Assembly: GCF_016433145.1 (NCBI RefSeq)
Contig: NC_058132.1
Coordinates: 15,567,968 to 15,631,824 of the forward strand
DNA length: 63,857 bases
DNA from: Gracilinanus agilis
Taxonomy: Eukaryota
Direction of reading: 5' to 3'
The position numbers were made by a program, and so were the translations under genes. The number at the start of each line of letters is the position of its first letter. The stretch's first letter is position 1. Positions 1,078-36,536 of this stretch are shown one piece after another. The notes under the pieces are model-generated. The model was given only the letters and a program-made list of their open reading frames with translations, did not search any database and was not told the origin of the DNA.

Positions 1078-1105
1078 CTGTAGCAAAAAAAAAAACAAAC
1101 AAAAG
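1078..1105 (-). promoter_or_regulatory. 3' splice acceptor of the OR coding exon
   Basis: Minus strand reads ttttgtttgtttttttttttgctacAG|gctcc (AG at 1079-1078). A second candidate is tttcccttctAG|g at 1040-1039. The paralog has a positionally similar aaccAG|gtcc at 35321-35320. Confidence 0.65.
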
Positions 1106-7723: not shown

Positions 7724-7735
7724 ATGGATGGATAC

Positions 7736-7767
<32 letters not shown>

Positions 7768-7960
7768 ATGGAGAGATGGATAGAAAGGAAGAGAGATGGA
7801 TAGACAGATAGATAGATAGATAGACAGATGGATAGATGGATAGATAAATAGACAGATAGATTGATAGATGAATAGATGGATAGAGAGAGACATGGATAGA
7901 TGGATATATAGAGAGATGGATAGAGAGAGACAGATGGATGGATAGAGATGGATAGAGATG

Positions 7961-8003
<43 letters not shown>

Positions 8004-8170
8004 GAATAGATGGATAGAGAGAGGCATGGATAGATGGATATATAGAGAGATGGATAGAGAGAGACAGATGGATAGATAGAGATGGATAGAGATGGATAGA
8101 TAGATAGATAGATGGATGGATGGATGGATAGAGAGATGGATAGAGAGAAAGAGAGATGGATAGATGATAG
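7724..8170. repeat. Compound (GA)n/(GATA)n/(GGAT)n microsatellite
   Basis: Visible tandem gata/gatg/gaga units. It explains the low-complexity SIYL ORFs at 7544-8257. Confidence 0.95.
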
Positions 8171-8534
8171 TTTAAAGACAGGGTAGGTAGCAAGGCCTGT
8201 TGGCCTGTAGGAGGCAATGGCAGGGTTAATGGCAAGGACTTTCTTCCTCCTTTGCATGAAAATAAATAAAGCTCATGGCTCCCATCTCATCTAAGCAGCC
8301 TGTGGACCACAGGAGAGGATGAAAGGTGAAAATAGGAGAGCAAAGGTAGTTCCCAGTGATGGCAGCATGAATTCATATAAGAAAATAGCACTTAAACTGA
8401 ATCTTGAAAGAAACTAGGGATCTGAGCTGAAGAGCAGAGGTGGAAGTTTAAAAAAATAAAAACCATGGAGAGATATGACTAGATTATAAAACATTTAAGT
8501 GGTTTGGGACACCCTCAATGACCAAACTCAAAGA

Positions 8535-9075: not shown

Positions 9076-10424
9076 ACTATATAATTTAAAGCAGAGAGGG
9101 ATTAAAGAGGCCATCAATCCCATCCACTCATTTTATAGATGAGGAAACTGAGGCCCACAAAGATGATTAATAGTAGCTAGCATTTATGTGGCCTTTTAAA
9201 TTTTTCAAAGAACTTTGCATATGTCATTTAATTCTATTTTCACAACTCTATGAGACTGAGTAGTGGTGGTGGTGGTGGTAGTAGTAGTAATAGTAGTAAT
9301 AGGAGGGGAAGTAGGAACAGCAGTAGTAGTACACAGGTGAAAGCCATTATTTCTATAGCACCTTTAAGGTTTGCAAAGTGCTTTACACATGCTATCACAC
9401 TGAACCCCCCACAAGAATCCTGAAAAGTAGGTGCTATTATTATGCCCATTTTACCTCCGTAAAAAACTGAGAAGGTTTAAGTGACTTGCCCAGGGTCACA
9501 TAGCTAATAAGTGTCTGGGGCAGGATTCAAACTCAGGTCTTCTGTATTTCAAGTCCAACTTTCTATCCACTGTCTAGCCTAGCTACCTCATATTATACCC
9601 TCATTTTACAAAGGACTGAACTGAGGCTGCTGGAGGGTGAATAATTGACTAAGATTGTAATCAAAAAGAATCTAAGTGGAGCAACTGGGTGGCTCAGTGG
9701 ATAAAGAACCAGACCTGAAGTCAAGAGGACCTGGGTTCAAATATGATCTCAGATACTTTCTAGCTTGTGATCCTGGACAAGTTACATAACCCCATTTGCC
9801 TAGCCCTTGCCCTCCTGTTTTAGTTTTTTTTACTAAAACAGATATCAGTGGTTACTTTTTTAAAGTGTGTAGGGAGGGATTTGAACTCATGTCTAGGTGA
9901 TTTAAGCAGTACACTTACAGTCAGTTCAAATCCAGCCTCACTTGCTTACTAGCTTATGTCCCTTAACTTTTGTCTCAGTTTCCTTATTAGTAAAGTGGAT
10001 ATATTAATAGCACCTACTTCCCTGGGTTGTTGTATGGCTCACAGAGGGTAATGTTCATAAAGCACTTAGTGTAGTTCCTGGCACATAATAGGTGCTGTGT
10101 AAATCTTGCCTATTATTAATATTACTATGATAGATGGGGTTTCAACCCAGAGCCTCCCCAGAGTCAATGCCAGTTCCTTTAGCCCTGGAGGTATCTCTGT
10201 TATCCAGTTAAATTTGAATGTGTTTATCAAGAGAGCCCTGGGCATCAGGGCATGAAAACTGTCACTGCATCAACTCACAATCTCTATCTGCTAGGGCACA
10301 GAGAGATCGCTACTGTAGCGGGGGTGGGGGGCGGGGGGGTGGAAATAAGAGCAGCAATGTTCAATAAGGGACCACACCTAAACAAGAAGAGCTACTATTT
10401 ACCACATTTAGGTTCATAGTGCCA

Positions 10425-10980
10425 GATAGATAGATGGAGAGATAATCAGAGAGAAATTGGATGGGGAGAGAGAGACAGACAAACAGATAGATAGACAGAG
10501 AGCTAGAGATGGANNNNNNNNNNNNNNNNNNNNNNNNNNNNNNNNNNNNNNNNNNNNNNNNNNNNNNNNNNNNNNNNNNNNNNNNNNNNNNNNNNNNNNN
10601 NNNNNNNNNNNNNNNNNNNNNNNNNNNNNNNNNNNNNNNNNNNNNNNNNNNNNNNNNNNNNNNNNNNNNNNNNNNNNNNNNNNNNNNNNNNNNNNNNNNN
10701 NNNNNNNNNNNNNNNNNNNNNNNNNNNNNNNNNNNNNNNNNNNNNNNNNNNNNNNNNNNATAGAGATAGATGATAGATCTCAATAGAGATACAGAAAGAG
10801 TTGATTAGAAAAAGATATATAAATACAGAGATTAGAGAGAGATAGAAATAGAGAGATAAGATAGATATACATAGGCAGAGAGATAAAAAGACAGAAATAG
10901 TTTGATAGAGGTAGAGATATAGATAAGTGATAGAAAAATATATACACATAAATACACACACATATATATATACACAGAGA
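10425..10980. repeat. (GATA)/(GA)/(TA) simple repeat spanning an assembly gap (N 10514..10759)
   Basis: gata/gaga units on both sides of 246 N. Confidence 0.9.
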
Positions 10981-11066
10981 TAAAAACATCTATGTGTATA
11001 TGTGTGTACAGATTGCATGTATATACATACACATTACATGCACATATATAAACACACATATGGTAT

Positions 11067-11300
11067 TATTGTTCAGACATTTCCATTGTGTCAGATTCTT
11101 CATGACCCCATTTGGGGGTTTTCTTGGCAGAGAACCTTGAGTGGTTTTCCATTTCCTTCTCCCACTCATTTTGCAGATGAGGCAAACAGGATTAGGTGAC
11201 TTGCCCAGGGTCACACATCTAGTAAGTGTCTGAGGCCAGATTTGAATTCAAGAATTTGAGTCTTCCTGACTGCAGTCCTGGCACTCCATCCACTGGACCA
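11067..11300 (-). mobile_element. MAR1-type marsupial CORE-SINE
   Basis: Diagnostic gaccccatttgggggttttcttggc...ccatttccttctc...cattttgcagatgagg...gtgacttgcccagggtcacac. Confidence 0.8.
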
Positions 11301-12079
11301 CGTAGCTTCTATTGCACATATGTATATTAGCATACAGACATATTTGCTCAGATACTACCTGGCTTTTGGCCTTGGTCAAGTCACAAAGTCCCTTCGGGCC
11401 TCAGGTTCCCCTTTTATTAAGCTGAATAATTCTTGCCCTATCTACCTCACAGGGTTACTTTGAGGATAGTTTTAAAATGCCAGGTGATACAATGGAAAGA
11501 ATGCCAGAGCTGGAGTCAGGAAAGTCCTGAGTTCAAATCAGATCTCAGGTCATTTCTAGCTATGGAACCCTGGGCAAATTTCTTTCTGCCTTAGTTTCCT
11601 CATAGGTAAAACATATATGTGAGCATATATATGTATATATATGCATATATTCTGAGGATTATTTACATATGTATAATGTTATCCTTCAACAACCCCAGGA
11701 GGTAATCCCCATTTTACAGATGAGGAAACTAAGACAGACAGAGGTTAGTAACTAGCCCAGAGTCACACAGCTTATAACTGCCACATTTGAACTCAGGACT
11801 TTCATGACTCCAGCTCTGGCATTCTATCCACCACATTACCTAGCATTACCTACCACTATATTCAAAGCCACTTGGTGAGGTCCATAGTACAAGTATTATT
11901 AATCTTAATAAAAGAGGAAGCTGATGCCCAAAGGGACTAAGTGACTTGTCCAAGGTCACAAAACAAATGAGGGTCTGAGCTAGAGTTCAAACCTAGGTCT
12001 TCTTATTCCCAGATCATGTCTTTTCAGTGACTTTCTGGCTCCTTGAAATAGTGTAATATGATCATTCTGACACTAGATC

Positions 12080-12410
12080 TCGCTGGCCCGAGACCCCAGA
12101 CCATACTTCATTTTCCTGTGCCACCTTGGGGGCCACCAAGGGCACTGGGCCATCTGCCTGCTGTGACCAGCATTCCCCTACCCTGCTCACAGAGCAGTAA
12201 TATCTCTTCACACATCTGTCCGCCAATCCTCCAGGGCTTCGCCTGAGGTCTCTGAGGCTGCAGGCTCGGGTTTAAGCTGCCCTCACCATCCATCGGTTGG
12301 CAGAGGAAGCTATGAAGACTCCGAAGCTGAGTCTGGGGGAAGGAGCCCTGGCCTTGGAATCTTCTGATGACTTGTTTGGGAGACTGGGTACGTGCCTTCG
12401 CCTGTCCATG
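12080..12410. other. GC/CpG-elevated unique island with a CTCF-like motif
   Basis: Clearly GC-richer than its flanks, with several CpGs. The minus strand reads CCCCAAGGTGGCAC at 12131-12118 (12/14 to CCASYAGRKGGCRS). Confidence 0.35.
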
Positions 12411-12589
12411 CCTTAGGATGCTCCTCTATCAGTTAAGTAGAGCAGAGTAGGCAAAATAGTATCTCAGATCCCCTCAAGCCTTGAGTCCTACGACTAGCAT
12501 CTCCCTTATCCTATGATGCCACGACCTCCTCTCTCTAGGCTTGTTTCTTTATTGTTTAAAAAAAACCTTGCTTTCTGTCTTAATAACAA

Positions 12590-12925
12590 TATTACATATT
12601 ATATATAATAGTACATTATCTATCACTACATATGTTATATTATTGCATAATGAAATAACTTATGTAATAAGTTATATATAATATGCATGTTATATATAAA
12701 TCTATATAATATAAATAAGTTATATGTATGAAATAATTTATGTAATAAGTTATATATAATATGCATGTTATATATAAATCTATATAATATAAATAAGTTA
12801 TATGTAATATATAATTATATATTCTATCTAATAATCCATTATATATAACTATATGATATATATTATAGTGTTATATTATATATAATAAACATAATTCTAT
12901 ATTATGTAATAATATATAATAAAAT
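12590..12925. repeat. AT-rich low-complexity array with a 78-bp tandem duplication (12650 and 12728), inside a SINE1 copy
   Basis: atgaaataa(c/t)ttatgtaataagttatatataatatgcatg... occurs twice at period 78. SINE halves flank it (aaaaccttgctttctgtctt... on the left, ...ggcaagggctagg...gtgacttgccc on the right). Confidence 0.85.
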
Positions 12926-14514
12926 AACCAAAAGGCAAGGGCTAGGAAAACGAGGTGAAGTGACTTGCCCAGCTAGAAAGTGTCAGAGATCAGATTTGAA
13001 CCCATGTCTTAACCCAACTCCATGCCTAGTACTCTATCCACTGTGCTACCCAGCTGCCTTCAAATCCTTTATTTGTAAAGAGACTGGATTGTATGAGATA
13101 ATTTCTTGCGGCCCTTCCAGCTCTAACAGCTTGAGTCTAGGAGTTCCTGAGGCCAGACAGCACACAAAATCTTGAGCAGCTCAACAAATGAGGGGAAGTT
13201 AGCCAAGACCGCTCTGGTGGCTGAGGCAGCACTAAAGAGATTGGGCAGGGGATGGGGTGGGAGGGATGGGGCAGTCTTCTTCTCTTGGGCATAACCTTGT
13301 GCCTTTTATTAAATTGATAGTTATCATTTCATCTCCTACTCAACAAATCTGGAGGTGCCTGTAATGGATTGAATGCCCAGGGCTTTGCCATCCTTTCCCC
13401 AAGATGCCCCATGGTCAGGCCACTGGATTCAAGTCTCTAAAGAACAGCAGAAGCCCAGACTCAAACTGAATCCTGACCATACTCAGGTAAGGAGACAAGA
13501 AGTAGTGAGGGGAAGAGGGCAGAGATCTGGGTTTGAAGTTAGTAGACATGAGCCAAAGTCCTGACTCCTGTTTCTAAAATCTCAATGACTTTATACAAGT
13601 CACTTTTTATTAACACATTAGAACCCTTATCTGGAAAATGGTAATAATAACGATTACATGACCTGTCCCCCAGGACTGTTGGCAGGAAAGCTTTCTGTCA
13701 ACCTCAAAATGCCATTAAAACAAGATAAAGACAAACAGGAGATTTGAACCAAACATCCTATGAAAATTGAAAATGAAAACGTCCCTTTCAGCACAGAGTG
13801 AGGACTAAGGTTAGGCAAAAGGGGTGGTAAGAAGAGGAGGTCCTGAGCAGGGACCTGAAAAAGGGAAAGATCAAGTAGAGGAACCATGAGATACCGCCTA
13901 ACTGTGTGACCCTGGGCAAGTCACTTAATCCCATTGCCTGGCTCTTACCACTCTTCTGCTTTGGAACCAAAACAGAGCATTGATCCTAAGACAAAAGGTA
14001 AGGAGTTTTTTAAAGAATATTCTAATCAACTACCAATTCAATTAATTCTTGAAGAATAAATTGTGACTGTCACCTCCAGAGAATGAACTGAAAAAATGGA
14101 CACATGAAAAACATGATTTATATAGACTTATCTGTCTCCCAGATGATGCTTTCTATGATGCAGGGAAAGGAGACACTTGTAAATAAATTCTATTAATAAA
14201 AAGGGGGAAAAAAGAGAAGGATTTCGATGAAGAAGTAAACACAGGATATCCCATGCATGGGGGGGGGGGGACTGCCTGGGGGAATGCTTGGCAGGAGAGA
14301 GCAAACAAGATTGGGAAGAGCTCTGTGGAGAAAGAAAGATTGAATGAATGAAAATGCCTTCATTAAGTGTTTACTATGTAGCAAGAATTAAGCAAAAGTT
14401 TTGCCACAGGATGGCAAAAAGTGAGATAAGCCTCTGCCTTCAAGGAGCTTACAATCTAATTAGAGGAAATGACACAGATAAAGGAGTCCTGGCTGGAAGG
14501 AAATTTCAATTTGA

Positions 14515-14733
14515 TTTTCTTTTTTTTCTTTTCTTTTTTTTACCCTCACCTTCTATCTTAGAATCAATACTGTCTATTGGTTCCAAGGCAGAAGAGTGGT
14601 AAGGGTAGGCAACGGGGGTTAAGTGACTTGCCCAGGATGACAAAGCTAGGAAGTGTCTGAGGTCAGATTTGAATCCAGGACCTCCCATCTCTAGGCCTGG
14701 CTCTCAAACCACCGAGCTACCCAGCTGCCCCCA
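14515..14733 (-). mobile_element. Full-length SINE1_Mdo-type SINE with 15-bp TSD
   Basis: Reverse complement of gggcagctgggtagctc...; TSD gaaatttcaatttga at 14500-14514 and 14734-14748. Confidence 0.9.
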
Positions 14734-15334
14734 GAAATTTCAATTTGAGTAATAACAGAGATGATGAATTGACCTATAGATCAATCAATTGCCTCTCCAG
14801 ATGAAAGCTGTAGCCAAAGCAAGAAATAGAAAGATAGGGAGGAGGCATGTACATCATAGCAAGAAGATGGCAACATAGATTGGTTGACTGGCTGGATGGG
14901 ATGGGAAGATGAAGCATGGTCTGAGACTCCAGAAAAAGTGGATTAACAGAGTTTAAATTCACGCAGCAATCCAGAAAACCATGGTCCCCAAGGACAGACA
15001 TGGATAGCATTTTAAGTAGCCTGCAATTAAGATAAAAAGATAATTAGAATAAGATTGTAAAGGACCTTAAATATAAGGCTAAGAAGGCTATATTTTGTGC
15101 TAGAGACACTAGGGAAGCAATGGCATTTATTTTGCTTATTCTTCAAGTTGCATGAATATGTTTTATTGTTTCCATCTTATAACCAAGAAAAAACAATTGA
15201 GGAATACAATGAACACATCTATCAGTATATATACCATTTCCCCAATGATCCTATTCCCTGCCCCCTCCACCTGAACCTTCCCATATATATGTTCAAACCT
15301 CTTTTGAGAGTTTTTTTTAATTGTTGTTATTTCC

Positions 15335-15560
15335 ATTCAAGTCTGACCCCATTTGGAGTTTTCTTGGCAAAGATACTAGAATGATTTGCCATTTTCTTCT
15401 CCGGTTCATTTTACACATGAGGAAACTAAGGCAAGAAGGGTTAAGTGATTTGCCCAGGTTCACATAGCAAGTAAGAGTCTGAGGTCAGATTTGACTTCAG
15501 GAAGATGAGTCTTCTTGTCTCCAAGCTCAGCATTCTATCATCTTCTGCACTACCTAGCTA
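15335..15560 (-). mobile_element. MAR1-type CORE-SINE
   Basis: gaccccatttggagttttcttggcaaagatactagaatgatttgccatttt...gaggaaactaaggc. Confidence 0.8.
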
Positions 15561-18340
15561 TCCATGGTGAATTAATATTCCATTGACATACCCAACTTAT
15601 TCATCTACTTTCTACTTAATAGATGTTTATGGGATTTCCAAGGGATGGAGGTAATATCAAATGTGCCACTAGGAATATTTTGTCATATTTAAGACCTTTC
15701 TTTCTGCCTTTGCCTTCCGGGCATTTCATGTCAGGGAGTGATATTTCTGGATTAATGACTTTGAACAGTTTCCTAATTTTACTCACAAAATTCCAAATTA
15801 TTTTTCAAAATGTTTGGACAGTTCACTGTTTCTCCAGTGGTGTGTTAAAGTATTTCTATTTCTACCCTATGGATTTCTATCGTTCATGATGATCTTTGCC
15901 CCTTTTTTGAGTTTCAGGTGAAAGTCAAAGTTTTTTATTTTAATTTCTCTTATCCCCTGTCAGTCTGACTTAAAAAAAAAGATATGAATTTACTCATCAC
16001 TTGTTTATTTATGCGTATTGGAGGATTGGGTTTTTTAAGATTATTCACTTACAAAAATGAATCATATGGAAATATGTTTTGTGTGATAATACATGGATAA
16101 GCCAGATGAAATTGTTTGTCAGCTCCAGGAAGGGAGACTGAAGAAGGGAAGGAGACAATATGGATCATATAACTTCAAAAAACTTATGTGGAATTTTATT
16201 ATTAAAATAATTAATTAATTGATCAATTAACTTTTTAAAAAAGATATGGTTTACAGTTGTTCTTTTGCTCATATAGTTCAATGAATAGAGGACTGAGCTT
16301 AAAATTGAGAATCCTGATTTGAAATCCTGCTTCAGAAAACTATTCGCTAGATGACCCTGAGAAAGTTATATAACTTCTCCCTGTTTCTGTTTCCTTGTTC
16401 ATAAAATGAGGGAGTTGACTTCATGAACTCTAAGGTTCCTTCCAAAACTACCCTGAACATCCAATGAGTATTGGGTATTGAGTAAGAGACCTTGAGTTGG
16501 AATCTTATCCCAGCCACTGGTGTGCCTGTGGTGTAGTCATTTCTCTTCTCTGGGCCTCCATTTTCTCATCTGTAAAACAAAGAGATTGGATTTGATGACT
16601 TCCAAGATCCCTTCCTGCCCTTAAATCTTTTATGATGTTATCCATTTAGATCATTAATCCACAAAGGATTTCTGAACAGCAGAGTCATATGACTAAACCT
16701 GTGTGCTAGAAAGAATATTTTGTCAGTGGTATGAAGAATATCTGGTGAGAAGAGAGGCTGGAAGCAAAGAGACCAATTTGGATGCCATTAAAATAGTCCA
16801 GGTGAGCATGACTAAGGATCCCAACCAAGCACAGTGGCAAATACTTAAGTGGAGAGGAGGAGATGGAAGCAAGAGATGCTGGGAGAGGGATGTAGAACAG
16901 CCAACAGGGCTTGTATCTGAGTGGCTGTAAAAGGTAACAGAGAGAGAAATGTCAGATGTGATTCCAAAGTTTTAAGCCTAGAACATGGCAGCAAAAAGAA
17001 ATTGGGACATTTGGAAGATGAGTGAATTTAGCATCAGAAGAGGACTTATGGTTTCCATTTGGCAAATGGTAGGTTTGAGGGGCAAGAAAGGCTCTTAGGT
17101 GATATTCACTGGGCAGATGGAGTTGCAGGACTAAAGGCCAGGGGAGAAGTTAGGGCTGGGCATCCATTGTAGACATCTACATAGAGGTGATACCCAAGGC
17201 TGTGATGGTAGATGAAAGTCCCAAGAAGAGTTCTACAGCAAAAAAGAGCAATGGGTCAGGGAGAGGCTTACAAAGACACACATGAAGTATGTGTACTACT
17301 CCTACTCCTACTCCTATTATTACTACTACTTTTGTAGTAGGAAGAAGAAGATAAGTCAAGGAAGGAGGAAGAGAAAGAGAAAACAGAGAGGTAGGAGGAA
17401 AATCCACTAGAACTGTGTCAAGGTAGACAATGGAAGACCATAAACTTAGAAACTTTACGGGGGGCGAGGGGTGGGGGGACTCTCAAAGAGGTTAAGTGAC
17501 ATTCCCATCTAATAAATGTCAAAAAGGAGATTTAAATCCAGAGCTGTGACTCCAAACTTAGCAGGCTATCTGCTGTGCAACTTAGACTCTCATTGTTGGG
17601 GTGGACCCAGAGTGTTTTGGTGAATTGAACCAAGCAGGATTCTTGGAATGGCTTTGCCAGAGATGTGAAAACTTTTAACAGTTCATAACCAGCCAAGGTC
17701 CTTGATGAGAGAGTAACCAGAATGATGGAAATGGTCACCAACATTTGGGAACCGCATCAAAATAAAAGAAAATAATGACGGTCAAAAGAACAATGGGCTT
17801 GGAGTTCATGAAGTGACCTTGAAGGGAACAAGGTGTGGCTCATGGGAATGACCCAGAGTGGAAACCTCTAATGTACTTTTGTGTTCTTATAGTGAGAGAA
17901 CAAGAATGTCTAAAGGATAGAAAAGTCCACAAGAGCCGTGTGAAGTGGGAGAGTGACTGGAACTGGCAGAGTTCATTAAGGAAGTCTCCATGGAGGAGGT
18001 AAGTCTCAAAAAGGGAGATGGAAAGAAGGAAGCTAGTGAGCTAGCTTGTCTGGATGTTGGGGATAGAGGGGAAGAAAGGGAAGATGGGGCAGGGATTGAG
18101 GCTGTACTTATGATTTCACTGGTACAAGAAACTCCCTGGATAATAAAATTCTCTCTACCAATTAAATAATCTCTTTCTCTGAAACCTCTACCTAACTGCC
18201 TCAAGCATTGAAAGGCTGTGACTTGCCCAAGATCACACAGCCAATAAAGTATCAAAAGGCAGAACTTCAACCCAAGTCTTGCTGAGCCAGCTCTCTCTAT
18301 CTCTGCCACCCCCAACTCTCCCCTTTAACAAGTTCTATAT

Positions 18341-18540
18341 GGGGCAATTGGGTAGCTCAGTGGATTGAGAGCCAGGCCTAGAGACGGGAGGTCCTAAGTT
18401 CAAATCTGACCTCAGACACTTCCCAGCTGTGTGACCCTGGGCAAGTCACTTGACCCACATTGCCTACCCTTACCACTCTTCTGCCTTGGAGCCAATACAC
18501 AGTACTGGCTCCAAGACAGAAGGTGAGGGTTTTAAAAAAA
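18341..18540 (+). mobile_element. Full-length SINE1_Mdo-type SINE
   Basis: ggggcaattgggtagctcagtggattgagagccaggcctagagacggg...ttggagccaatacacagtactggctccaa...A tail. Confidence 0.9.
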
Positions 18541-18789
18541 ATGTCCTATAAGTCAAAAAACTAGGTAATAGAAGTAACACCTCGCTTGGGCAGGTTACAA
18601 AGCTCTTTGCTAATGATAAACTTTTAAATGAAGTGAAGCAAATATTCTTTGACTGCTTTCCACAGGTGAGGAAATAGACTTAAAGAGAGACGGGGACTTA
18701 CTCATGGTCTCATAGCTAGGAAATGAACCCAGGTCTTCTCGCTCTTGGGCTAAGCCTCTTCACTAAGTGACATCTACCTTTGTTGTATG

Positions 18790-19025
18790 TTGCTGTTGTT
18801 CAGTCATTTCAGTTTCCTTGGGACCCTGTTTGGAATTTTCTTGGTAAAGATACTGGAATGGTTTGTCATTGCCTTCTCGAGTTCATTTTACAGGTGAAGA
18901 AACTGAGGCAAACAGGGTGAAGTGACTTGCTTGGAGTCACACAACTAGTAAGTGTCTGAGGCTGGACTTGGACCCGGATCTTCCTGACTCCAAGCCCAGA
19001 ATTCTATCCCCTGGGCCACCTAGCC
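18790..19025 (-). mobile_element. MAR1-type CORE-SINE
   Basis: gttgttcagtcatttcag...ttttcttggtaaagatactggaatggtttgtcattgcc...gaaactgaggcaaacagggtgaagtgacttgc. Confidence 0.8.
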
Positions 19026-20725
19026 AAAGAAGCTTTAAGGCAGCTATGTGGGAAAGCTCCTAACAGGAACAGTCTGTGCTTTCAGATATTCCTGGCTTCC
19101 TCCAACTCTATCTGTGCCTTTTGCCCATCCCCTAGGGTTATTATAATACTCAAAGTTCAGGGTACTAAGATCCAGTACAAGGAAACAGGGGGCACACAGC
19201 AAGACAGAGCAAGCCAGCTTTCTTGAGGGAACATGCATACATCATGAAAGGTAGACAAAGAATTTGGAGGAAACAGGACAGGTTCCTCTGAGAATGGAGT
19301 GTCCATGCTGGTAAAGTCTGGTCAGTGATAGAGGGTTCTTGTCTGGATCTATAAGGATGAGGCATGGAAGGAATCAATCAATTATAAAACATTTATTAAG
19401 CTCCTATTGTGTGCCAGACACTATCCTAAGCCCTGGATCATTGTGCTAAGTGCTGGAAGGAAGTCACGGACTTGGACCTGAAGACTAGTAGTGACTGATG
19501 CTAGAGTGTCTGAGGTCAAATTTGAACCCAGGATCTCCTGCCTCTAGGCCTGACTCTCAATTCACTGAGTGACCTAGCTGTCTCTCAGCTGCCTTATTTT
19601 ATAAAGGAAGGATCTTAGGCATAATCTAAGGAAAAATTCCCTCCAATCAGAACCATCCATCAGTGCAATGGACTACCCCAAGAGGAAATGGATGACCCAC
19701 CACACACACACCTATCAAATGAAAGCTTGAGTGATAATGGATATCAGAGGAAACTAAGAGATCTGAAAGAAATGAAACAATTTTCAGTTAGTGATATAGT
19801 CGGGACTAGAAGCTAGGTCTAGCTCCATTTAGGACTCATTGCACTTGATTAAGTGGTCCCTCAACAGTATATCTTAATTGCCATGACAACTACTTTGGGC
19901 AGAAAGGTAGAGGATTTCTATAAATGTAAATCCTTCCTATTGCTCTTCTTTGGGCCTACTGTGGCATTTAACAGATGAGGAAGCTGAGGTAAACAGAAGT
20001 TAAATGACTTGTCTAGGGTCACACTGCTAGTATGTCCAAATTTGAAGTCCTATTTTCCCGACTCCAGACTCAATTCTCCTTTCTCTGTACCACCTTTATC
20101 AGCAACAAAAGTCCATCGTTGCACCCTAGCTTAGAAAAAAAAATAGAATTCTTGATTTTATGTCTATGTTTGTCAAGGTTTCCTAGAGAGGGAAAAGAAA
20201 GGAAATAGGCATTTATAAAGCACCTGCTATGTGCCAGGCACTTTACAATTATCTCATTGGATCCTCACAACAACCCTGAAATTTATTATTGCTGTTATTA
20301 TTCCCATTTTACAGATTAGGAAATTGAAGTAGATAGAGGCTAAATGACCTACCCAAAGACACAGAGCTCCTAGTAAGTGTCTGAGGCTAAATTTGAACTC
20401 AAAATTCCCCAATTGCAATCCTGTACTCTGTGCACTGTGGATATCCCTAGCAGCCTCAGAACAAGCTTGCCAACTCCTTGTGTTTAACACGGTGCCGTAG
20501 ATTTTAAAATTAATATTCAATATCTCCAAAGTATAATATTTATAAAGATTTATTAATATTTAACTAGAGAGCTAGAGAACACAGGGAACATTCACCACTC
20601 AATTCACGTGGAAGAGAGCGCAGGAGCCAAGAAACCGCAACTCTATACAGACAACGTAGCAATGCATGTATACAAAAGGCAAAAGGAATTGTGGGTGATA
20701 CAGGAAGGAATTTGGGGCAAAGCAG

Positions 20726-20752
20726 TTCCAGGGGTTCAAGATTTTCCAATTA
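20726..20752. promoter_or_regulatory. Candidate OR promoter: O/E-like site plus homeodomain site
   Basis: TTCCAGGGGT at 20726-20735 and CAATTA (reverse complement TAATTG) at 20747-20752, about 110 bp before a GTAAGT donor and 1.3 kb upstream of the OR6 ORF. Confidence 0.4.
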
Positions 20753-20832
20753 TGCAGGACTCTGCAGGTAGCAAGCCATTGGGATAAGAACCCTACCTGG
20801 GATCTCATTGTTGAAGGGAACACCCTTCACCG

Positions 20833-20862
20833 ATGCAGATCAACCCCTTCTCTACAACTCAT
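20833..20862 (+). CDS. Candidate coding exon 1 of the OR6-family gene (MQINPFSTTH)
   Basis: ATG at 20833 is the first Met after an in-frame TGA (20812-20814). Ten open codons end at a GTAAGT donor (20863-20868) in phase 0, matching the acceptor at 21993-21994. Confidence 0.45.
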
Positions 20863-21994
20863 GTAAGTTCCGAGAGGTGACTAGACCACCAAAGGGTTAT
20901 GGGGCTTGTGTAGGGTGGTCACACAGCAGGCAGATATGGGGCAAAGTTGGGAATTGAACCCAGTTTCCATATACCTAGAGAGTATGTATTATCATCCAGA
21001 TGGATTCCGAGTTTTCTGTGGAATACCACTTTTTTAGAACCATTAAATTTTCTAACAACTATAACAATAAATGACAATGATGTTTTTGATAGTATAGAGA
21101 GTAAATCTGAATATTAGAATGAATAATCATAAAATGGTGAAAGTTCAGAGGCAAGGAATAGGCAAGGAACCAGAAATAGGTTCATGAGGATTCATTTGAA
21201 GACCTGGGGACCATTAGGATGGAGAAAGGAAGACTTGAGAGGGAGATAAGAGCCTTCAAATATTAGAAGAATTAGATGTGTTTCATGTGGCCACATAAGG
21301 CAGAAGGAGGGCAGAATTTATGGGGGGTTGAGGGGGAGGAACAACTCCATAATTTTATCTGCTTGAAAGTGGGCATTACCTTTGTTGAGAAGAAGTGAGT
21401 TTCCAGTCATTTGAAGTCTGCAATTGGCAACTGATTGACCATTTATTTGGGATATTATAGAATAGGTGAGCAGATATCATCTCTGAGGTCTCTTTCACCT
21501 TCATGATTTAGATTCCATGACTGTAGAAGAATCATTCTCTCATAGGTCATGGAATCATGGCAATGTAGAATCTCAAAACAGGATAAAGTTTCAGAGGTCA
21601 TAAAGTCCATATCATACCGGAAGAAGCGTGCCCTTTAAAGCATCCTTAACAAAGCATCATCCAAGACTTCATTTGAGAACCTCCAGGTAGGGGATTCCAA
21701 CAACTCTTAGGTAAAAACAGCCCGGTGAACCAGTACCTTTAGGTATCCCAACTAGGATCCCAGGCTCACAACTCCTCTTTTTTCTCAGTTTCCTCATCTG
21801 TAAAATAGAAGTGATTTTACTTTCACTATTGACCTCACAAGATTTCTGTCAGGAAAGCCCATTGTAAAACTCACCATGTTGTAGGAATGGGAGCTACGGA
21901 CTTTTTCAGGGAATATAGACACCTTGTCCAACTGTTTCCTTGAATAGATCAATCAGCATCATGAAGTCATAAATATATTGCTCTTTGCCCCTAG

Positions 21995-22957
21995 CCTGGC
22001 AGACACTGGGAGGAGGCCAACATGACCCAGGTCCAAGAGTTCATCCTGTTGGGTTTGTCACCAAGGCCAGGCCTGCGGGGTGTCCTCTTTGCCGTGTTCC
22101 TGACCCTCTACCTGCTGACTCTCTTGGAGAACACCATCATCATTCTGCTCATCTGGAGTCACGCAGAACTCCACAAGCCCATGTATTTCTTCCTGGGGAA
22201 CCTGAGCTGCCTGGAGATGTGCTATGTGTCGGTCACGATGCCCACCCTGCTGCTCGGGCTGTGGTCAGGATCCTGCCACGTCCCCTTCACCTCCTGCATG
22301 ACTCAGCTCTTCTTCTTCATCACACTCATCTGTGCCGAGTGCACCCTGCTGGCCTCCATGGCCTATGACCGCTATGTGGCCATCTGTCGTCCCCTCCACT
22401 ACCCCATCCTCATGAGGCCGCAGGTCTGCCTCCTGCTGGCTGCTGCCTCCTGGATGGGCAGCCTCAGTGTCTCTGTGATCAAGACAGCCTGCATTGCTGG
22501 CCTCTCCTACTGTGGCCCCAATGTCCTCAACCACTTCTTCTGTGATGTCTCCCCTCTGCTCAACCTCTCTTGTACCCACGTGGCACTGACTGAGCTGGTG
22601 GACTTCATCTCCGCCATCGTCATCCTGTGGGGCTCACTGCTGGTTGCCTTGGCTTCTTACACAGCTATCGGGGCAGCTGTGATACGAATGCCCTCGGCTG
22701 CTGCCCGACGCAAGGCCTTCTCCACCTGTGCCTCCCATCTCATTGTGGTGGGCATCTTCTATTCAGCCACCATTTTCATTTATGCCAGGCCCAGTAGAAT
22801 TGAGGCCATGGACCTCAACAAACTGCTCTCTGTCATCTACACGGTACTCACACCCATGTGTAACCCCATCATCTACTGTCTGCGGAACAAGGAGGTCCAA
22901 GGAGCTTTGCGCAAGACACTCCACAAGGTTGGATTCAGTCAGAATTCAGACAGCTAG
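21995..22957 (+). CDS. Class II olfactory receptor, family 6 (OR6B/OR6Z-like), intact coding exon; internal Met at 22022
   Basis: LHKPMYFFLGNLS, MAYDRYVAICRPLHY, HFFCDVSPLLNLSCT, ELVDFI, KAFSTCASH, NPIIYCLRNKEV; LLNLSCT/ELVDF/YCLRN are typical of OR6. The acceptor ctctttgcccctAG at 21993-21994 is followed by open codons PGRHWEEAN-MTQ. Confidence 0.95.
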   Translation, partial: PGRHWEEANMTQVQEFILLGLSPRPGLRGVLFAVFLTLYLLTLLENTIIILLIWSHAELHKPMYFFLGNLSCLEMCYVSVTMPTLLLGLWSGSCHVPFTSCMTQLFFFITLICAECTLLASMAYDRYVAICRPLHYPILMRPQVCLLLAAASWMGSLSVSVIKTACIAGLSYCGPNVLNHFFCDVSPLLNLSCTHVALTELVDFISAIVILWGSLLVALASYTAIGAAVIRMPSAAARRKAFSTCASHLIVVGIFYSATIFIYARPSRIEAMDLNKLLSVIYTVLTPMCNPIIYCLRNKEVQGALRKTLHKVGFSQNSDS

Positions 22958-23182
22958 AGGTGGAGTTATGTGGTCAAGTAAAACATTTATTAAGCACCTT
23001 CTTTGTACTTCACATTACACTAGATCCTGGCAGAAATCCAAAGTTCATAGCATCACTCCAAGTTGGAAGAGACTTCAGATGGCATCTTGAGTCAAACACA
23101 CAAGACAGTAGCTTTTGCATTTTCCAAAAAGTAGGTTCCCTCTTCATATCTTCCCTGACCCTATCAATAATACCAGTACCTC

Positions 23183-23366
23183 GGGCAGCTGGGTAGCTCA
23201 GTGGAGTGAGAGCCAGGCCTAGAGACGGGAGCTCCTAGGTTCAAACCCGGCCTCAGCCACTTCCCAGCTGTGTGACTCTAGGCAGGTCACTTGACCCCCA
23301 TTGCCCACCCTTACCACTCTTCCACCTATGAGACAATACACCGAAAGTACAAGGATTTAAAAAAAA
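23183..23366 (+). mobile_element. Young SINE1_Mdo-type SINE with 15-bp TSD, 226 bp after the OR6 stop
   Basis: gggcagctgggtagctcagtgg...; CpGs retained (gacggg, cccggcc); TSD aataataccagtacc at 23166-23180 and 23367-23381. Confidence 0.92.
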
Positions 23367-24296
23367 AATAATACCAGTACCATCCCATTTATCCAGGCTC
23401 AGAACCTCAAAATGATCTATGGTGCCTACATCCCTCCCATTTTCCATTTAGAAACAGTTGCTAATTCCTGTTAATTATTTGATATTTAAAAGGATCTGTG
23501 ATCTATTTGGTATGGGTATTTCTTCTCCTCCTGGAGCTAGCGATCTATCCATGCCTTCAGGTTCTGGGTAGATCTTGTCCAAGCCTTTCCATAAACCAAC
23601 TCCATTGACACCAACCCAACATGCCAAAGGCTTCCTCGGAGTTATTTATTTGTTCTTTAATATTATTTGGAAATGAGTGGCATGATCAGGCTATTCAACT
23701 CTACCTAAGTGACTTATCTCCTTTGGATGCAATATATAGCTTCAAGGAGGTCTGTGGTTCCATTTCTGATGCCCAACTCATCAACCACATCATTTCTATC
23801 TGCAGAAAATCTCCTATATTTACCTCTTTGTCTCCCTTTTCACTGTCTGCTAAGTCCCTCACTTCTTAATTCCTTTCACAGCACATTCCTTCAGTTCCCT
23901 TCTCTTCCATCTTTATTTGTTATGAATGCAATATACTCTTATGTACTTAATAGGGAGAAGCTATAGAATTATGCTCATTGAGAGATTATGAAACATGGGC
24001 TGAGTCTTCCATATAGATCCCTTGGATATTTGTGGTGATCCAATGCCAACACTGTGTTAGAGGTAGAAACTTATTAAACAGGTAAAGTGACAGAGCCATT
24101 GGTTCTTCCTAGAAACACATGAACAAGCACAAACATTTATTAAGCACCTGCTGTGTACTGTGCATTATTCCAGATCCTGGAGAAAAATTCAAAGATGATA
24201 GATACTCAGAGTTGGAAGACACCCCAGATGTCATCTAGCCCAACACATAAGACAGCAATCCAACCAACAGAACAAGGCAAAATATGATCTCTGCCT

Positions 24297-24745
24297 AGTC
24301 TGGCTGGAACAGGCTACTAAGAGGCTTGGAGACAAAGGGATTCTCTCACCACAGGAGATACTGATCCAAGTTGAATCTTTGATGGTAAGGTAACTGGAAC
24401 AAATCCTTGGTCAGCCAGTAAAATCACAAGACTAAGGAGAAAGGCACTCTGCAATTGGTCCACCCAATTGCAGTGGCATAACCTTTCCTCAGCCTAGGCA
24501 CTTGCTTGGTGTTGACACCCAAGATCTCCAAAGGTTTCAGGTTACAGACAGTTAGCTGGATCACAGCTGCTGAGCTCCTTCTTCCAGCCTTGGCAATTCA
24601 CTCCAGCTCCTTCTCTAGCTCCTGCTGCATTCTATACAGAATTGTTCATGTCTGCCAACCAAGATCTTGCCTCTAGCTGCCTGTGCATTTCTATATATCT
24701 ATCTTATCTATCTTTATATTCTATCTCATAAATTTGCCTGTAACA
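24297..24745. mobile_element. 449-bp LTR-like insertion inside an L2 remnant
   Basis: Splits L2-like ctctgcc|...|ttcaaggag. 4-bp TSD gcct at 24293-24296 and 24746-24749; right end ...tgtaaCA, but the left end lacks TG. Confidence 0.5.
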
Positions 24746-26714
24746 GCCTTCAAGGAGTTTCTCATTTATGAGAGGGAATAAAAAAATAATTATTCTATTT
24801 ATATAACACTTAAATACTTTCAAAGTGCTTAACATAATATCTCATTTGACTGGTCAGTTATCAAACACTTACTCTATGCCAAGTACTGTGCTAAGAACTA
24901 AGAATACAAAAACAAGATTATAACTGACTGCCCCCATGGAGATTACACCTATTAGGAGAAACATTTCACGTATAAATGTAAATAGGAAAAAATGCAAGAT
25001 GAAAGAGAAGGAAGGACACTAACAGCTGGGGGAGCCAGGAGAGGATTCATGGAGAGGGATTTCAAGGGGCAGAGGAAAGGAGGAAATGCATTCCAGATAT
25101 CAGGGGATGAATGTGCAAAGGTTTGGGGATGGGAGATGTGTGAGGAACACTAAGTAGGTCAGTATGGCTGGACTGAGGAGTTCAGGGAGGGAAATGATGT
25201 ATAAGCAGAATGGAAAGATGTCAAGATACCAATGCAAAAAACTATGCTAACATTTCCTAATAAGTGAATTAAAGAAGTATCAAAAACAACATGAGGAAAT
25301 GAGAAATCAGGACCCCATAACCTTTCTGGATGTCAAGAGAGTGGATATCTGCAGATACAGAAGAGAGAGGAACGCACAGGCATTATTCTTCACAGGCAAA
25401 AGTGGAATTTTCCCCATCGTAGTGACATACTCATTTCTGGTCAGAGCCCCATCTGGAGTAGCTCATTCAGTTGTGAACACTATTGTTGTTGTTGTTCAGT
25501 TGTTTCAGTCATGTCTGATTGAAAACCCATTTGGAATTTTCTCAGAAAAGATACTAGAAGCGTTTTACCATTTCCTTCTCCAGCTCATTTATATAGAGGA
25601 GGAAACTGAGGCAAATATGGTTGAGTGATTTGCCTAGAGTCACACAGCTAGTAAGAGTCTGAAACTGAATTTGAACTCAGGTTTTCCTGCCTTGGAACTG
25701 ACACTCAGTATTGATTCGAAGACTAAAGGTAAAGGTTTAAAGAAGAAGAATCTGGATAACCATTTGTTAAAGATGTTATTGAGTGGTTTTTGTTCAGGAA
25801 TGAATTGTATTAAATGAGCTTGGAGGTTGTTTCCAACACCAAAATATTGTAAATTATTATATATGTATATATGGAAATATATATGTTTGTATAGGTCTGC
25901 CTCATCCTTTGTAATTAGTAAACTCTAAAGTTTCTTTTTTCCAGCCTTTTTTTGAGGAGGGAAATTATAATAATGTCTCACATTTTGATAAAACTTTAAG
26001 GTTTACATAACACTTTGTTTAAAATGAACCAGTTAGTTAGCTAGTGCAAGAGTCAATGTTTCATTAAAGTAAAGGAAATGAAGTTTTCAGAAAGCTGACA
26101 CAGTGAAGGTGAGAGGTGGGATTCGAATCTTGGTCTCCTGACTCCCAAACCAGCAGGTTCCAACTGTTTGTTTAATACACCCCACAGGGAAAGAGGGGCT
26201 GAATCCATAAAGGAGGGCGTTCTTGATGCCACTCTGAAAGGAGTTCTTGGGTAGCAAAATGTTGATCTTTGGCTTTTTTTTGCCAGAAAAATGAGTTTAA
26301 TCACAGAGTAAAGGAATAACTGGAGGGATGCCCAGGGTAGGACCAGAAAATGATGTGCCTTCCCTAGAGACAGAGGATTCAATGTTTTCTGTGTTCTTTT
26401 TTTTTTTTTTCAGTAAACGCTTATCTTCTGTCTTAGAATCAATACTAAGTTTTGTTTCCAAGGTAAAGGATTGGTCAGGCTAAGCAAAGCAACTGGGATT
26501 AAATGACTTGCTTAGCATCACACAGCTAGGAAATGCTCTTTCCACGTTTTTTCCAGCAATGCCTGTGATACAATATCACATATTATCCCTGTGAAAAAAA
26601 TAGAAATCTATAAGCTAGATAAGTGCCTTGAAGAATAGTCCTGAAGAGGTCAACATTAACTTGGAAGGAGGGCCCTAGTACAAAACCCTTGGACCAATGC
26701 TATTCACCATTTTT

Positions 26715-34288: not shown

Positions 34289-35260
34289 TCAGGTTGTCTT
34301 CAAACCACTTTTCTTCCTACCCAATAATCTCCACAGAGCAACTTTCACCTCTTTGTTCCTCAGGCTATAGATGATGGGGTTGAGCATGGGAGTAACAAGA
34401 GTGTAGGACAGGGACACAATTTGTTTGCTCTCAGGAGAGTAAGTAGACTTGGGTTGGAGGTGGATTACACAAGCAGTGCCATAGAATAGGGCCACAACAA
34501 TAAGGTGGGCTGTACAAGTAGACAGGGCTTTATGGCGCCCAGTAGCAGACGGCATCTGAATAACAGCTGCCAGGACATGACCATAGGACACGATGATGAG
34601 GGAGAAAGGTACCATCATGACAAACACAGTGGCTACAAGAACATAAGCCTCAAAGAGAGAAGTGTCAGCACACACTAGCCTTAGGAGTGGTGCCACATCA
34701 CAGAGGAAGTGGCGAACCCCTCGGGGTCCACAAAATGGGAAGCGAAAGAGCCAAATGGTAAACAGCAAGGAAACTGGGATACCCGTCATCCAGCACGCCA
34801 ATGCCAAAAGAAGGCAGAGTCTGGGGTTCATGAGGACCCCGTAATGCAGTGGGTGGCAGATGGCCACATAGCGGTCATAAGCCATCACAGTCAGGAGGAA
34901 GCACTCTGATGTGACACAGGACAGAATGAGAAAGAGTTGGAGGGCACAGCCTGTCAGAGAGATGCCCCTACCAGCCACCAGGCTTTCCAGCATCTTGGGT
35001 ACGATGTCCAAGGAGAAGCAGATCTCCACCAGAGCCAGGTTCCGGAGGAAAAAATACATAGGTGTGTGGAGGGCAGCGTCAGCCACAGTCAGGAATACAA
35101 TGAGGCCGTTTCCCAGCATGGTGATTAGAAACATCCCCAGAAACAACACAAAGAGAAGCGGTTCCAACCTAGGAATGTGAGAAAAACCCAAAAGAAGAAA
35201 TTCCCCAATTGAAGATTGGTTGCTTCTCGCCACAGTCACAATGGGATCCATTAGGTCCAT
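34289..35260 (-). CDS. Class II olfactory receptor, family 10 (OR10A-like), intact paralog of 38..1000
   Basis: Same motifs as the first copy with about 41 aa differences over 307 aligned residues. Start is Met 35260 (MDLMDP...NQSS); alternative Met at 35251. Confidence 0.95.
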   Translation of the reverse strand: MDLMDPIVTVARSNQSSIGEFLLLGFSHIPRLEPLLFVLFLGMFLITMLGNGLIVFLTVADAALHTPMYFFLRNLALVEICFSLDIVPKMLESLVAGRGISLTGCALQLFLILSCVTSECFLLTVMAYDRYVAICHPLHYGVLMNPRLCLLLALACWMTGIPVSLLFTIWLFRFPFCGPRGVRHFLCDVAPLLRLVCADTSLFEAYVLVATVFVMMVPFSLIIVSYGHVLAAVIQMPSATGRHKALSTCTAHLIVVALFYGTACVIHLQPKSTYSPESKQIVSLSYTLVTPMLNPIIYSLRNKEVKVALWRLLGRKKSGLKTT

Positions 35261-36536
35261 TCCTTCCCAGGAGTTCCAGAGAGCATAAGGAAGTGATGAG
35301 CTCAAGGAGATAGCAGGACCTGGTTCTAAAATTAAGGAAAATCCACTGAGAAATGGGACTATACTTTCTCTATCAAAAGTTATCACAATTGTCAATATAG
35401 GCAGAGAATTCAAACCCTACCTCTGAAATTGATCATTCCCATGAATAAGTCAGATTCTCTGCACTTTGTGGAATCTCATTTTCCTCAGAGGTAAAATTAC
35501 TTACCCAGATAGAAGCAGAATCAACACTGAATACAGGCCATCTGACTCCAAATTAAATGTTCTTTCCAACATATCTTATGGTCTTTGTTACTTTTTTTAT
35601 TAGGTCAAGAAATGGCAGATCAATAATCCACAAGCTCCACTGGTATCCTCATGATGACAGGAGAAAGCAAAGAATACTAGCACATTGGATGGACCCCCCC
35701 CCCCACGGCAAATTTATGCATGTACCTACGCAAGAGTTCATCAGGTAACCATGGAAAAAATTTTTTTCTAAAAAATAAAATTTAAAAAAAAAAGAGTTCA
35801 TCAGAATGGGCTGGCACTAATCAATAGAATCTGCAACACTGGAGGAAAGATTCATCTTCGAGATCACATACCTACTTGAGTATTTTAAACAAGAGATTTA
35901 ACTTGGGTGAAAGGAAGTGTTGAGTGAAATACATTTGGCTAAACATGGTAGAGGTTTCCTTTTTTCTTGAAAACCACGACTCCTGCACCTTCACAGATTA
36001 GTTTGAGTTTCCATGACCAACAGAAGACACCATCATTACGTACATAGCCAACATTCTGGTGCCGAGACTCTCCTTTACAAAGTTAATGCTCTGACAATAG
36101 GCACGGTCAGACAGCCAGGCTACACTCAAGAGTCTTTGGAAATTGGTGGAATAAAATAGATTATGGACTTCTTTTTTTGCACTCTTTAGAAATGAAGATG
36201 CACTGTCATGCTCTACCTCTTATGGGAAGGTAAACCTGACTGCCTTAAACATTATTTTTTTTTTTTTGCTCCTCCTCCAGTTATTATGTGTAGAGTTTTA
36301 AGTCTATATGGTAAGATGGTAAGAATCTGAGCTCAAGGACTGATTTTACTTTGTTTCTCTTTGAATCCTCCAAACTTGGCATAGTCTTCCTTAGAATGGG
36401 TTTTTAATAAATTTTTTGCTACCCTGGATTGGAGAGTCACTTCCATGCCAAGATGAGTCATCAAAGGTGACATTAGTGGATGGGTTTAAAATTTGATGAG
36501 TTTGTAGGAATTCAAATTACTTCATATTTATTTATT

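What the first reader, a model, noticed from the sequence alone, without database searches (positions are those of the whole stretch)
20833..22957. OR6 gene probably has its N-terminus split by an intron
Seen: the called ORF begins MTQ and has no N-terminal sequon, yet the codon just before that Met is AAC (22019-22021), which would form N-M-T. The frame is open back to a TAG (21992-21994) whose AG ends a pyrimidine-rich acceptor. About 1.1 kb upstream, ATG 20833 gives 10 open codons ending exactly at a GTAAGT donor in the same phase. The spliced product is MQINPFSTTH|PGRHWEEA-NMT-QVQEF. Established: OR N-terminal N-glycosylation is near-universal and supports trafficking, and most ORs are single-coding-exon, although a minority of split-CDS ORs are known in human and mouse. 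Inference: this is an intron-split OR that single-exon ORF callers would truncate. The upstream ATG has a weak Kozak context and the internal one a good context, so leaky scanning could give glycosylated and unglycosylated forms.
Basis: partly seen in the sequence, partly recalled or inferred. Interest (0 to 1): 0.75.

Follow-up and report, generated by a model that had tools for sequence, protein, structure and literature searches.

The report
Opossum smell receptor with split start

Summary
The window is Gracilinanus agilis (agile gracile opossum). The gene is an OR6Z7-like/"olfactory receptor 5-like" receptor.

The idea that the coding region is split is well supported.
- The acceptor before 21995 is identical in position in 10 marsupial gene copies.
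- The 9 codons after it are open and free of indels, and they vary mainly at third positions.
- They carry the Asn of the N-x-T sequon.
- In 3 of 10 copies the "internal Met" is Val, so those copies must start upstream.

- ATG 20833 and donor 20863 are exon 3 of the existing 396-aa NCBI model for this gene.
- In the syntenic Monodelphis ortholog the donor is GA and the ATG is ATT.
- The segment is missing in possum and wallaby.
- An in-phase open ATG precedes 13 of 41 strong donors by chance.

What is conserved is ATG-GAG-GAG|GTAAGT at 17990-17998. It closes a 106-nt exon whose two splice sites are both conserved, and it is present in 9 copies from 8 species in all five orders sampled. Joined to 21995 it gives MEE-PGRHWEEA-NMT…, 323 aa, matching 323-aa models in other marsupials.

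This is a new member of a known kind, of modest interest.

The parts
17893..17998 (+). Conserved 106-nt upstream exon ('exon B'). It is mostly 5' UTR and ends with the start codon.
   Evidence: The acceptor TTTGTGTTCTTnYAG| and the donor GAG|GTRAGT are both conserved in 7 aligned marsupial copies (A9; A4). The exon is part of the NCBI model P0139.
17990..17998 (+). Proposed true start: ATG GAG GAG (M-E-E), in phase 0 at the donor.
   Evidence: The motif ATGGA[G/T]GAG|GT[A/G]AGT lies upstream of the main exon in 9 gene copies of 8 species. It is the annotated CDS start in Sarcophilus (L002:10001) and Phascolarctos (L011:4001). By a rough PWM its donor is the best of 451 GT sites.
17999..21994 (+). 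Intron of 3,996 nt between the conserved start exon and the main coding exon.
   Evidence: Inferred from the conserved donor and acceptor. The size is within the range for split receptors in PMC7055050. No reads were available.
21995..22957 (+). Main coding exon (7TM body, stop TAG 22955-22957).
   Evidence: Pfam 7tm_4. 81-94% identity to OR6Z7-like proteins. The acceptor position is identical in 10 marsupial copies and in 2 eutherians.
21995..22021 (+). Nine codons PGRHWEEAN ahead of the internal ATG, including the sequon Asn codon (22019-22021).
   Evidence: There is no indel, stop or ATG here in any of 10 copies. Variable columns by codon position are 2/2/6.
22022..22024 (+). Internal ATG (the M of N-M-T). 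It is a possible second start by leaky scanning, and the start of the 311-aa ORF that callers report.
   Evidence: This codon is GTG in 3 of the 10 marsupial gene copies (Sarcophilus x2, Trichosurus), so it is not the conserved start.
20817..20862 (+). 46-nt exon of the NCBI model ('exon C'). It is not conserved.
   Evidence: Recovered from P0139. In Monodelphis the donor is GA and the ATG is ATT (A7). The exon is absent from Trichosurus and Notamacropus. Because 46 is not a multiple of 3, including it puts ATG 17990 out of frame.
12312..12387 (+). First coding exon of the NCBI 396-aa model ('exon A'). Probably a non-coding 5' exon.
   Evidence: A 7-nt indel against Monodelphis changes its reading frame while the DNA stays alike.

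Best explanation
The gene is the Gracilinanus agilis member of the marsupial OR6Z7-like ('olfactory receptor 5-like') group. Its coding sequence is split by the intron that in most receptors lies in the 5' UTR.

Proposed structure:
- The start codon and two acidic residues (ATG GAG GAG, 17990-17998) sit at the 3' end of a conserved 106-nt exon.
- A 3,996-nt intron is removed from donor 17999 to the acceptor AG at 21993-21994.
- Translation continues in phase 0 into the main exon at 21995.
- The product is 323 aa and begins M-E-E-P-G-R-H-W-E-E-A-N-M-T. This puts the Asn of the N-x-T sequon into the protein, where it can be glycosylated in the ER and help the receptor reach the cell surface.

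In the two eutherians examined the same acceptor is followed directly by the ATG. The split therefore most likely arose because the start codon sits in different exons on either side of an old intron, not because an intron was inserted.

What is shown: conservation of both splice sites, of the ATG, of the phase, and of the open 9 codons. What is inferred: that this junction is the one used in G. agilis, that the Asn is glycosylated, and that the internal ATG 22022 (with its -3 A) may give a shorter unglycosylated form by leaky scanning.
For: Identity of the window:
- It equals G. agilis CM028237.1.

Acceptor and the codons after it:
- TAG| plus 9 open codons are identical in register in 10 marsupial gene copies.
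- Variation there is concentrated at third positions (2/2/6).
- No ATG lies in between.
- Three copies have N-V-T, so they have no internal Met (proteins).

The conserved start:
- ATGGA[G/T]GAG|GT[A/G]AGT lies 1.7-7.2 kb upstream of the main exon in all 9 copies with enough upstream sequence.
- These are the window, Monodelphis x2, Dromiciops, Sarcophilus, Macrotis, Trichosurus, Notamacropus and Phascolarctos.
- It is always 9 nt from the donor.
- The exon's own acceptor is conserved too.

Existing models:
- Sarcophilus, Antechinus, Sminthopsis and Macrotis have 323-aa NCBI models starting MEE, and Trichosurus has two starting MDE.
- The Phascolarctos model starts with the same MEE, followed by one extra in-frame exon (352 aa).
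- The start was mapped to this motif in Sarcophilus and Phascolarctos.

Frame and splice sites in the window:
- Joining B to D in the window is in frame and gives 323 aa (local frame check only).
- The B donor GAG|GTAAGT scores highest of 451 GT sites. The D acceptor tract is 75% pyrimidine.

Eutherians:
- Loxodonta and Dasypus keep the same acceptor, with AG|ATG.

Literature:
- Split receptors with the start Met in the adjacent upstream exon are an established class, with intron sizes of 550-22,628 bp (PMC7055050).
Against:
- The only RNA-seq reported for this species is from kidney, muscle and liver (PMC8390783).
- The NCBI model for this very gene (XP_044524423, 396 aa) uses a different path, A-B-C-D. 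It reads exon B in another frame.
- The context of ATG 17990 is only moderate (T at -3, G at +4).
- The window's exon B has a 4-codon uORF (ATG 17906).
- If exon A precedes exon B in the mRNA, its ATG 12312 opens a 70-codon ORF that overlaps the start.
- Conservation of CCATGGAGGAG could in part serve splicing or a regulatory site rather than coding.
Confidence: 0.65

Rival explanations
1. A short exon ending at 20862 supplies ATG 20833. It splices to 21995 and gives a 321-aa protein, MQINPFSTTH-PGRHWEEA-NMT….
For: - The letters and the phase are right.
- The donor CAT|GTAAGT is among the 7 best of 451 GT sites by a rough PWM.
- The same junction is used in the NCBI model XP_044524423.
- It is the only frame-restoring open AG..GT segment with fair splice sites in the intron.
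Against: - It is not conserved in the nearest relative available. In the Monodelphis ortholog the donor is GA and the ATG is ATT, and the 350 bp upstream are missing.
- It is absent from Trichosurus and Notamacropus.
- An in-phase ATG ahead of a strong donor is expected by chance in about a third of cases.
- Both key positions of the Kozak context are weak (C at -3, C at +4).
- The exon's acceptor is poor (gttgaAG|G).
- If exon B lies upstream in the same mRNA, the conserved ATG 17990 comes first and reads out of frame for 142 codons, across the receptor start.
- The NCBI model had no olfactory RNA-seq to lean on.
Confidence: 0.1
2. The NCBI 396-aa model is right. Translation starts at ATG 12312 and runs through exons A, B, C and D, giving an 85-residue extension ahead of the sequon.
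For: The four exons are in frame and open. ATG 12312 and the exon A donor are conserved in Monodelphis.
Against: - A 7-nt indel makes exon A read in a different frame in Monodelphis. The peptide is therefore not conserved although the DNA is.
- The frame used through exon B has a stop (TGA) in Trichosurus and Notamacropus (read from A4/A9).
- Exon C is not conserved.
- An N-terminal tail of about 95 residues is unlike eutherian orthologs, where the sequon Asn is residue 9.
- NCBI models of the orthologs in other species carry mutually unrelated N-terminal extensions, as expected when a gene predictor maximises ORF length.
Confidence: 0.07
3. The plain single-exon gene. Translation starts at ATG 22022 only and gives a 311-aa receptor without an N-terminal sequon. 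The conserved upstream features serve only as 5' UTR and splice signals.
For: - ATG 22022 has the best context (A at -3).
- NCBI and Ensembl models in Notamacropus and Vombatus start at this Met.
- The 311-aa ORF is a complete 7TM receptor.
Against: - The 9 codons upstream are open in all 10 copies, have no indels, and vary mainly at third positions.
- The Asn codon lines up with the sequon Asn of eutherian orthologs and of paralogs.
- Three of the 10 gene copies have Val at this position, and Petaurus models have Arg. In those copies the next Met lies after TM1, so they cannot use this start.
Confidence: 0.13

Closest known systems
Split olfactory receptor genes of mouse and human (Barnes et al. 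2020, PMC7055050): 41 mouse and 13 human genes
   Same: - The intact receptor has its initiating Met on the adjacent upstream exon.
- The intron lies in the extracellular N-terminal part.
- The intron size (3,996 nt) is in the reported range.
- The Met and the junction are conserved in orthologs.
- A possible second isoform from an in-exon ATG would differ by 12 residues, like their second class (3-15 residues).
   Different: - This is a marsupial gene from a different receptor subfamily.
- Mouse Olfr5 appears only in the general gene table, not among the split genes, in the supplementary text held.
- No RNA support is available here.
- The two eutherian orthologs examined keep the same acceptor but have the ATG as the first codon after it. 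The split therefore looks like a shift of the start codon across an old intron. Barnes et al. describe the mouse cases as intron insertions.
Annotated 323-aa marsupial OR6Z7-like / olfactory receptor 5-like models (e.g. Sarcophilus XP_031817553, Antechinus XP_051846852, Sminthopsis XP_074158709, Macrotis XP_074073894, Trichosurus XP_036599601/2)
   Same: Same acceptor, same 9-11 residue stretch ahead of the sequon, same M-E/D-E start taken from a 3-codon exon end, and the same total length (323 aa).
   Different: In G. agilis and Monodelphis the DNA motif is present, but the current models use other upstream exons.
NCBI model XP_044524423 of this same G. agilis gene (396 aa)
   Same: Same main exon and acceptor.
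   Different: It starts at ATG 12312, reads the conserved exon in another frame, and needs the non-conserved 46-nt exon to stay in frame.
Eutherian OR6Z7 / Olfr5 orthologs (312-314 aa)
   Same: 81-86% identical 7TM body. The sequon N-M-T is in the same place. The 3' splice site is homologous.
   Different: The start codon is the first codon of the main exon (AG|ATG), so the coding region is in one exon.

Membership tests
Olfactory receptor, family 6 subfamily Z-like (OR6Z7 / Olfr5 group) | 7TM olfactory-receptor domain over the whole ORF | tested here: met
   Pfam 7tm_4 at E 2e-50, residues 27-301, and 7tm_1 at E 3.6e-31.
Olfactory receptor, family 6 subfamily Z-like (OR6Z7 / Olfr5 group) | Closest relatives are named members of the subfamily | tested here: met
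   Best hits are 'olfactory receptor 6Z7(-like)' or 'olfactory receptor 5(-like)'. Identity is 88-94% in marsupials and 81-86% in eutherians.
Split olfactory receptor genes (criteria of PMC7055050) | Initiating Met on an upstream exon and conserved in orthologs | tested here: met
Met for ATG 17990, which is present in 9 copies of 8 species.
Split olfactory receptor genes (criteria of PMC7055050) | Splice junction conserved in orthologs | tested here: met
The acceptor is identical in 10 copies. The donor GAG|GTRAGT is conserved in 9 copies.
Split olfactory receptor genes (criteria of PMC7055050) | Intact full-length ORF (about 320 aa) across the two exons | tested here: met
   The B-to-D join is in frame and gives 323 aa. 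This was a local frame check only. The joined product was not sent to any search.
Split olfactory receptor genes (criteria of PMC7055050) | Transcript model with junction reads from olfactory tissue | not testable with these tools
The published RNA-seq for the species is from kidney, muscle and liver.
Split olfactory receptor genes (criteria of PMC7055050) | Intron within the N-terminal extracellular part or TM1 | tested here: met
   The intron falls after codon 3, which is 9 codons before the sequon Asn.

The most novel reading that the evidence does not exclude
The whole marsupial OR6Z7-like clade, across five orders and including paralogs, has kept a three-codon start (M-E/D-E) on an upstream exon since before didelphids and Australidelphia split. 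By textbook dating (not tested here) that is roughly 70-80 million years. Eutherian orthologs have the ATG abutting the very same acceptor. That would be a clean natural example of a split receptor arising by relocation of the start codon across a pre-existing 5' UTR intron, not by intron insertion. It would also mean that the current models in both didelphid genomes are mis-started.
Probability: 0.55. Interest if true: 0.4.

Novelty: new member of a known kind. Interest (0 to 1): 0.3.

Why it matters
- For annotation: the 311-aa single-exon call drops the glycosylation site. The 396-aa NCBI model probably adds 73 residues that are not real and misses the three-residue MEE start. Both would mislead receptor-repertoire counts and expression constructs, where the N-terminal sequon affects surface delivery (PMC13486327).
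- For evolution: the case shows how a split receptor can arise without any intron gain. The intron and its acceptor are shared with eutherians, and only the position of the ATG differs.
- The general phenomenon is already published for mouse and human, and it is already annotated in several marsupials. The gain is therefore incremental.

Tried and rejected
- Exact look-up of the 311-aa ORF found nothing, because the gene is recorded with its 396-aa product.
- I first assumed the window came from a diprotodont, from the 94% identity to wallaby. The cluster listing and the identity to L007 showed it is G. agilis.
- L008 (Monodelphis P0147) turned out not to be the syntenic ortholog. Homology stops 19 nt before the acceptor. 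L009 is the ortholog.
- The first global alignment of the exon C region misplaced the Monodelphis sequence. The local alignment was used instead.
- No exon-B-like sequence was found within 10 kb upstream in elephant or armadillo. Whether eutherians keep that exon is open.
- An N-terminal region search with Sarcophilus P0006 found no further extended proteins beyond those in the clusters.
They are a ranking aid only, because MaxEntScan was not available.
- The joined (spliced) product was deliberately never sent to any search tool. Exons were handled by reference.
- L007 carries letters where the window is masked with N (10514-10759). These were only counted as mismatches and were never read, printed or used.
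- The large representative-protein search and structure prediction were not needed.

Full report
**Observation.**
- ATG at 20833 is followed by ten open codons (MQINPFSTTH) and then GTAAGT at 20863.
- A pyrimidine-rich tract ends in TAG at 21992-21994.
- The frame is open from 21995 (PGRHWEEAN), and AAC at 22019-22021 lies directly before ATG 22022.
- The ORF 22022-22957 is a 311-aa olfactory receptor (Pfam 7tm_4, E 2e-50).
- The ATG-plus-donor arrangement is not improbable in itself. In the 20 kb upstream, 13 of 41 GTRAG donors and 218 of 893 GT sites are preceded by an open in-frame ATG in the required phase.

**What the gene is.** The best protein matches are marsupial and eutherian "olfactory receptor 6Z7(-like)" or "olfactory receptor 5(-like)" proteins.
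- Eutherian orthologs begin M-E-R-S-L-E-L-A-N-M-T-R-V-Q-E-F within one exon. The window's Asn codon before ATG 22022 therefore aligns with a real sequon Asn.
- The cluster listing held a Gracilinanus agilis model, XP_044524423 (396 aa).
- The locus of that model (L007) is identical to window 9312-25957 apart from the window's masked N run. The masked letters were not read or used. The window is therefore G. agilis chromosome record CM028237.1.

**The split is real.** I compared exon D starts in ten marsupial gene copies: the window, Monodelphis x2, Dromiciops, Sarcophilus x2, Macrotis, Trichosurus, Notamacropus and Phascolarctos.
- All ten have YYYYTAG| at the same position, followed by nine codons with no indel, no stop and no ATG.
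- Variable columns fall 2/2/6 on codon positions 1/2/3, which is the pattern of a translated sequence.
- In three copies the codon after the Asn is GTG (N-V-T), and Petaurus models have N-R-T. In those copies the next Met lies after TM1, so they must start upstream.
- The NCBI models mapped here all use this same acceptor: Trichosurus, Sarcophilus, Macrotis, Monodelphis, Dromiciops and Phascolarctos.

**Which upstream exon?** The Sarcophilus 323-aa model starts M-E-E, taken from a three-codon exon end.
- Its flanks match window 17953-18028, where the window reads CC ATG GAG GAG|GTAAGTCTCA, with the ATG at 17990.
- The motif ATGGA[G/T]GAG|GT[A/G]AGT occurs once, in the right orientation, 1.7-7.2 kb upstream of exon D. 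It does so in every copy with enough upstream sequence: nine copies, eight species, five orders.
- The ATG is always exactly 9 nt from the donor.
- About 100 nt further upstream, a second conserved block, TTTGTGTTCTTnYAG|, marks the exon's own acceptor. This makes it a bona fide 106-nt exon.
- Sarcophilus, Antechinus, Sminthopsis and Macrotis have 323-aa models starting MEE, and Trichosurus has two starting MDE. The koala model starts with the same MEE plus one extra in-frame exon.
- In the window, B joined to D is in frame and gives 323 aa, MEE-PGRHWEEA-NMT…. That was a frame check inside a local script.

L009 is the syntenic Monodelphis ortholog, collinear with the window from 11000 to 23100 at 82-91% identity.
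- Window 20496-20847, which holds the 46-nt exon's acceptor and most of the sequence up to the ATG, has no counterpart in L009.
- Trichosurus and Notamacropus lack the whole of about 20400-21170.
- Exon C is 46 nt long, so including it puts the conserved ATG 17990 out of frame. That ATG would then open a 142-codon ORF running across the receptor's start.
It is also the only frame-restoring open AG..GT segment with fair sites in the intron.
- That is what one expects either from a real young exon or from a gene predictor looking for a bridge.
- The only RNA-seq reported for this species is from kidney, muscle and liver (PMC8390783), so olfactory transcript support for the model is unlikely.

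**The 396-aa model.** Exon A's DNA is conserved in Monodelphis. A 7-nt indel shifts its frame, so the two species' models read different peptides from the same exon.
- The frame the model uses through exon B contains a TGA in Trichosurus and Notamacropus (read).
- Models of the orthologs carry unrelated N-terminal extensions from species to species, several of them low-complexity (MVVVV…).
- I therefore read the long extensions as artefacts of ORF maximisation.

**Comparison with eutherians.** Elephant and armadillo keep a homologous pyrimidine tract and AG at the same place. The next codon there is the ATG: AG|ATG GTG AGA… in elephant and AG|ATG GAG AGG… in armadillo, against AG|CCT GGC AGA… in the window.
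- The number of codons from the acceptor to the Asn is the same.
- The intron is therefore shared, and what differs is the exon that carries the start codon.
- Which state is ancestral was not determined, because I had no outgroup.

**Known context.** Barnes et al. [quoted passage not shown]
- Nearly all are split in the N-terminal part.
- In one class the Met is recovered in the adjacent exon. In a second class the alternative isoforms differ by 3-15 residues.
- Introns range from 550 to 22,628 bp.
- This gene meets their comparative criteria through the conserved ATG 17990. It lacks only transcript evidence.
- Mouse Olfr5 appears in their general gene table only.
- Loss of the N-terminal sequon Asn is reported to abolish membrane localisation of another receptor (PMC13486327).

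- Use of junction 17998^21995 in G. agilis, glycosylation of Asn12, and leaky scanning to ATG 22022 are inferences.
- The context of ATG 17990 is moderate (T at -3, G at +4), and that of ATG 22022 is better (A at -3).

**Verdict.**
- It is a new member of a known kind, of modest interest.

Noticed in passing
window 12291-12314: The NCBI model of the neighbouring minus-strand receptor (body at 38-1165) begins its CDS at 12293. That is 18 nt from ATG 12312 of exon A on the plus strand. The two receptor models therefore start head-to-head in one block that is 86% identical to Monodelphis. This could be a shared bidirectional first-exon or promoter region, or a pair of predictor artefacts.
   Followed up: partly
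window 12312-12387 vs L009:10715-10783: Exon A differs from Monodelphis by a 7-nt indel. As a result the two NCBI models translate the same conserved exon in different frames: EGALALESSDDLFGRL in the window against KEPWDLLMTCLGDW in Monodelphis.
   Followed up: yes
window 17906-17920: The window's exon B has a 4-codon uORF (ATG TCT AAA GGA TAG). The ATG is absent in Monodelphis and the other marsupials aligned.
   Followed up: partly
This resemblance is from memory and was not tested. The donor 20863 lies at the edge of one such fragment.
   Followed up: no
window 7544-8257 (-): A 237-aa ORF made of a degenerate tandem repeat (…SIYLSIYP…). It is a low-complexity repeat, not a gene.
   Followed up: no
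L008:10001-10063 and L009:6001-6099 (Monodelphis): The first coding exons of two Monodelphis models are runs of Met and Val (MVVVVMVVVL…). They are most likely predictor artefacts in microsatellite sequence. Both loci also carry the conserved ATG-GAN-GAG exon, which those models do not use.
   Followed up: partly
window 38-1165 (-) and 34289-35413 (-): Two related receptors in the window have frames open far upstream of their sequon (N-Q-S), with several candidate ATGs. Their true starts may also need checking.
   Followed up: no
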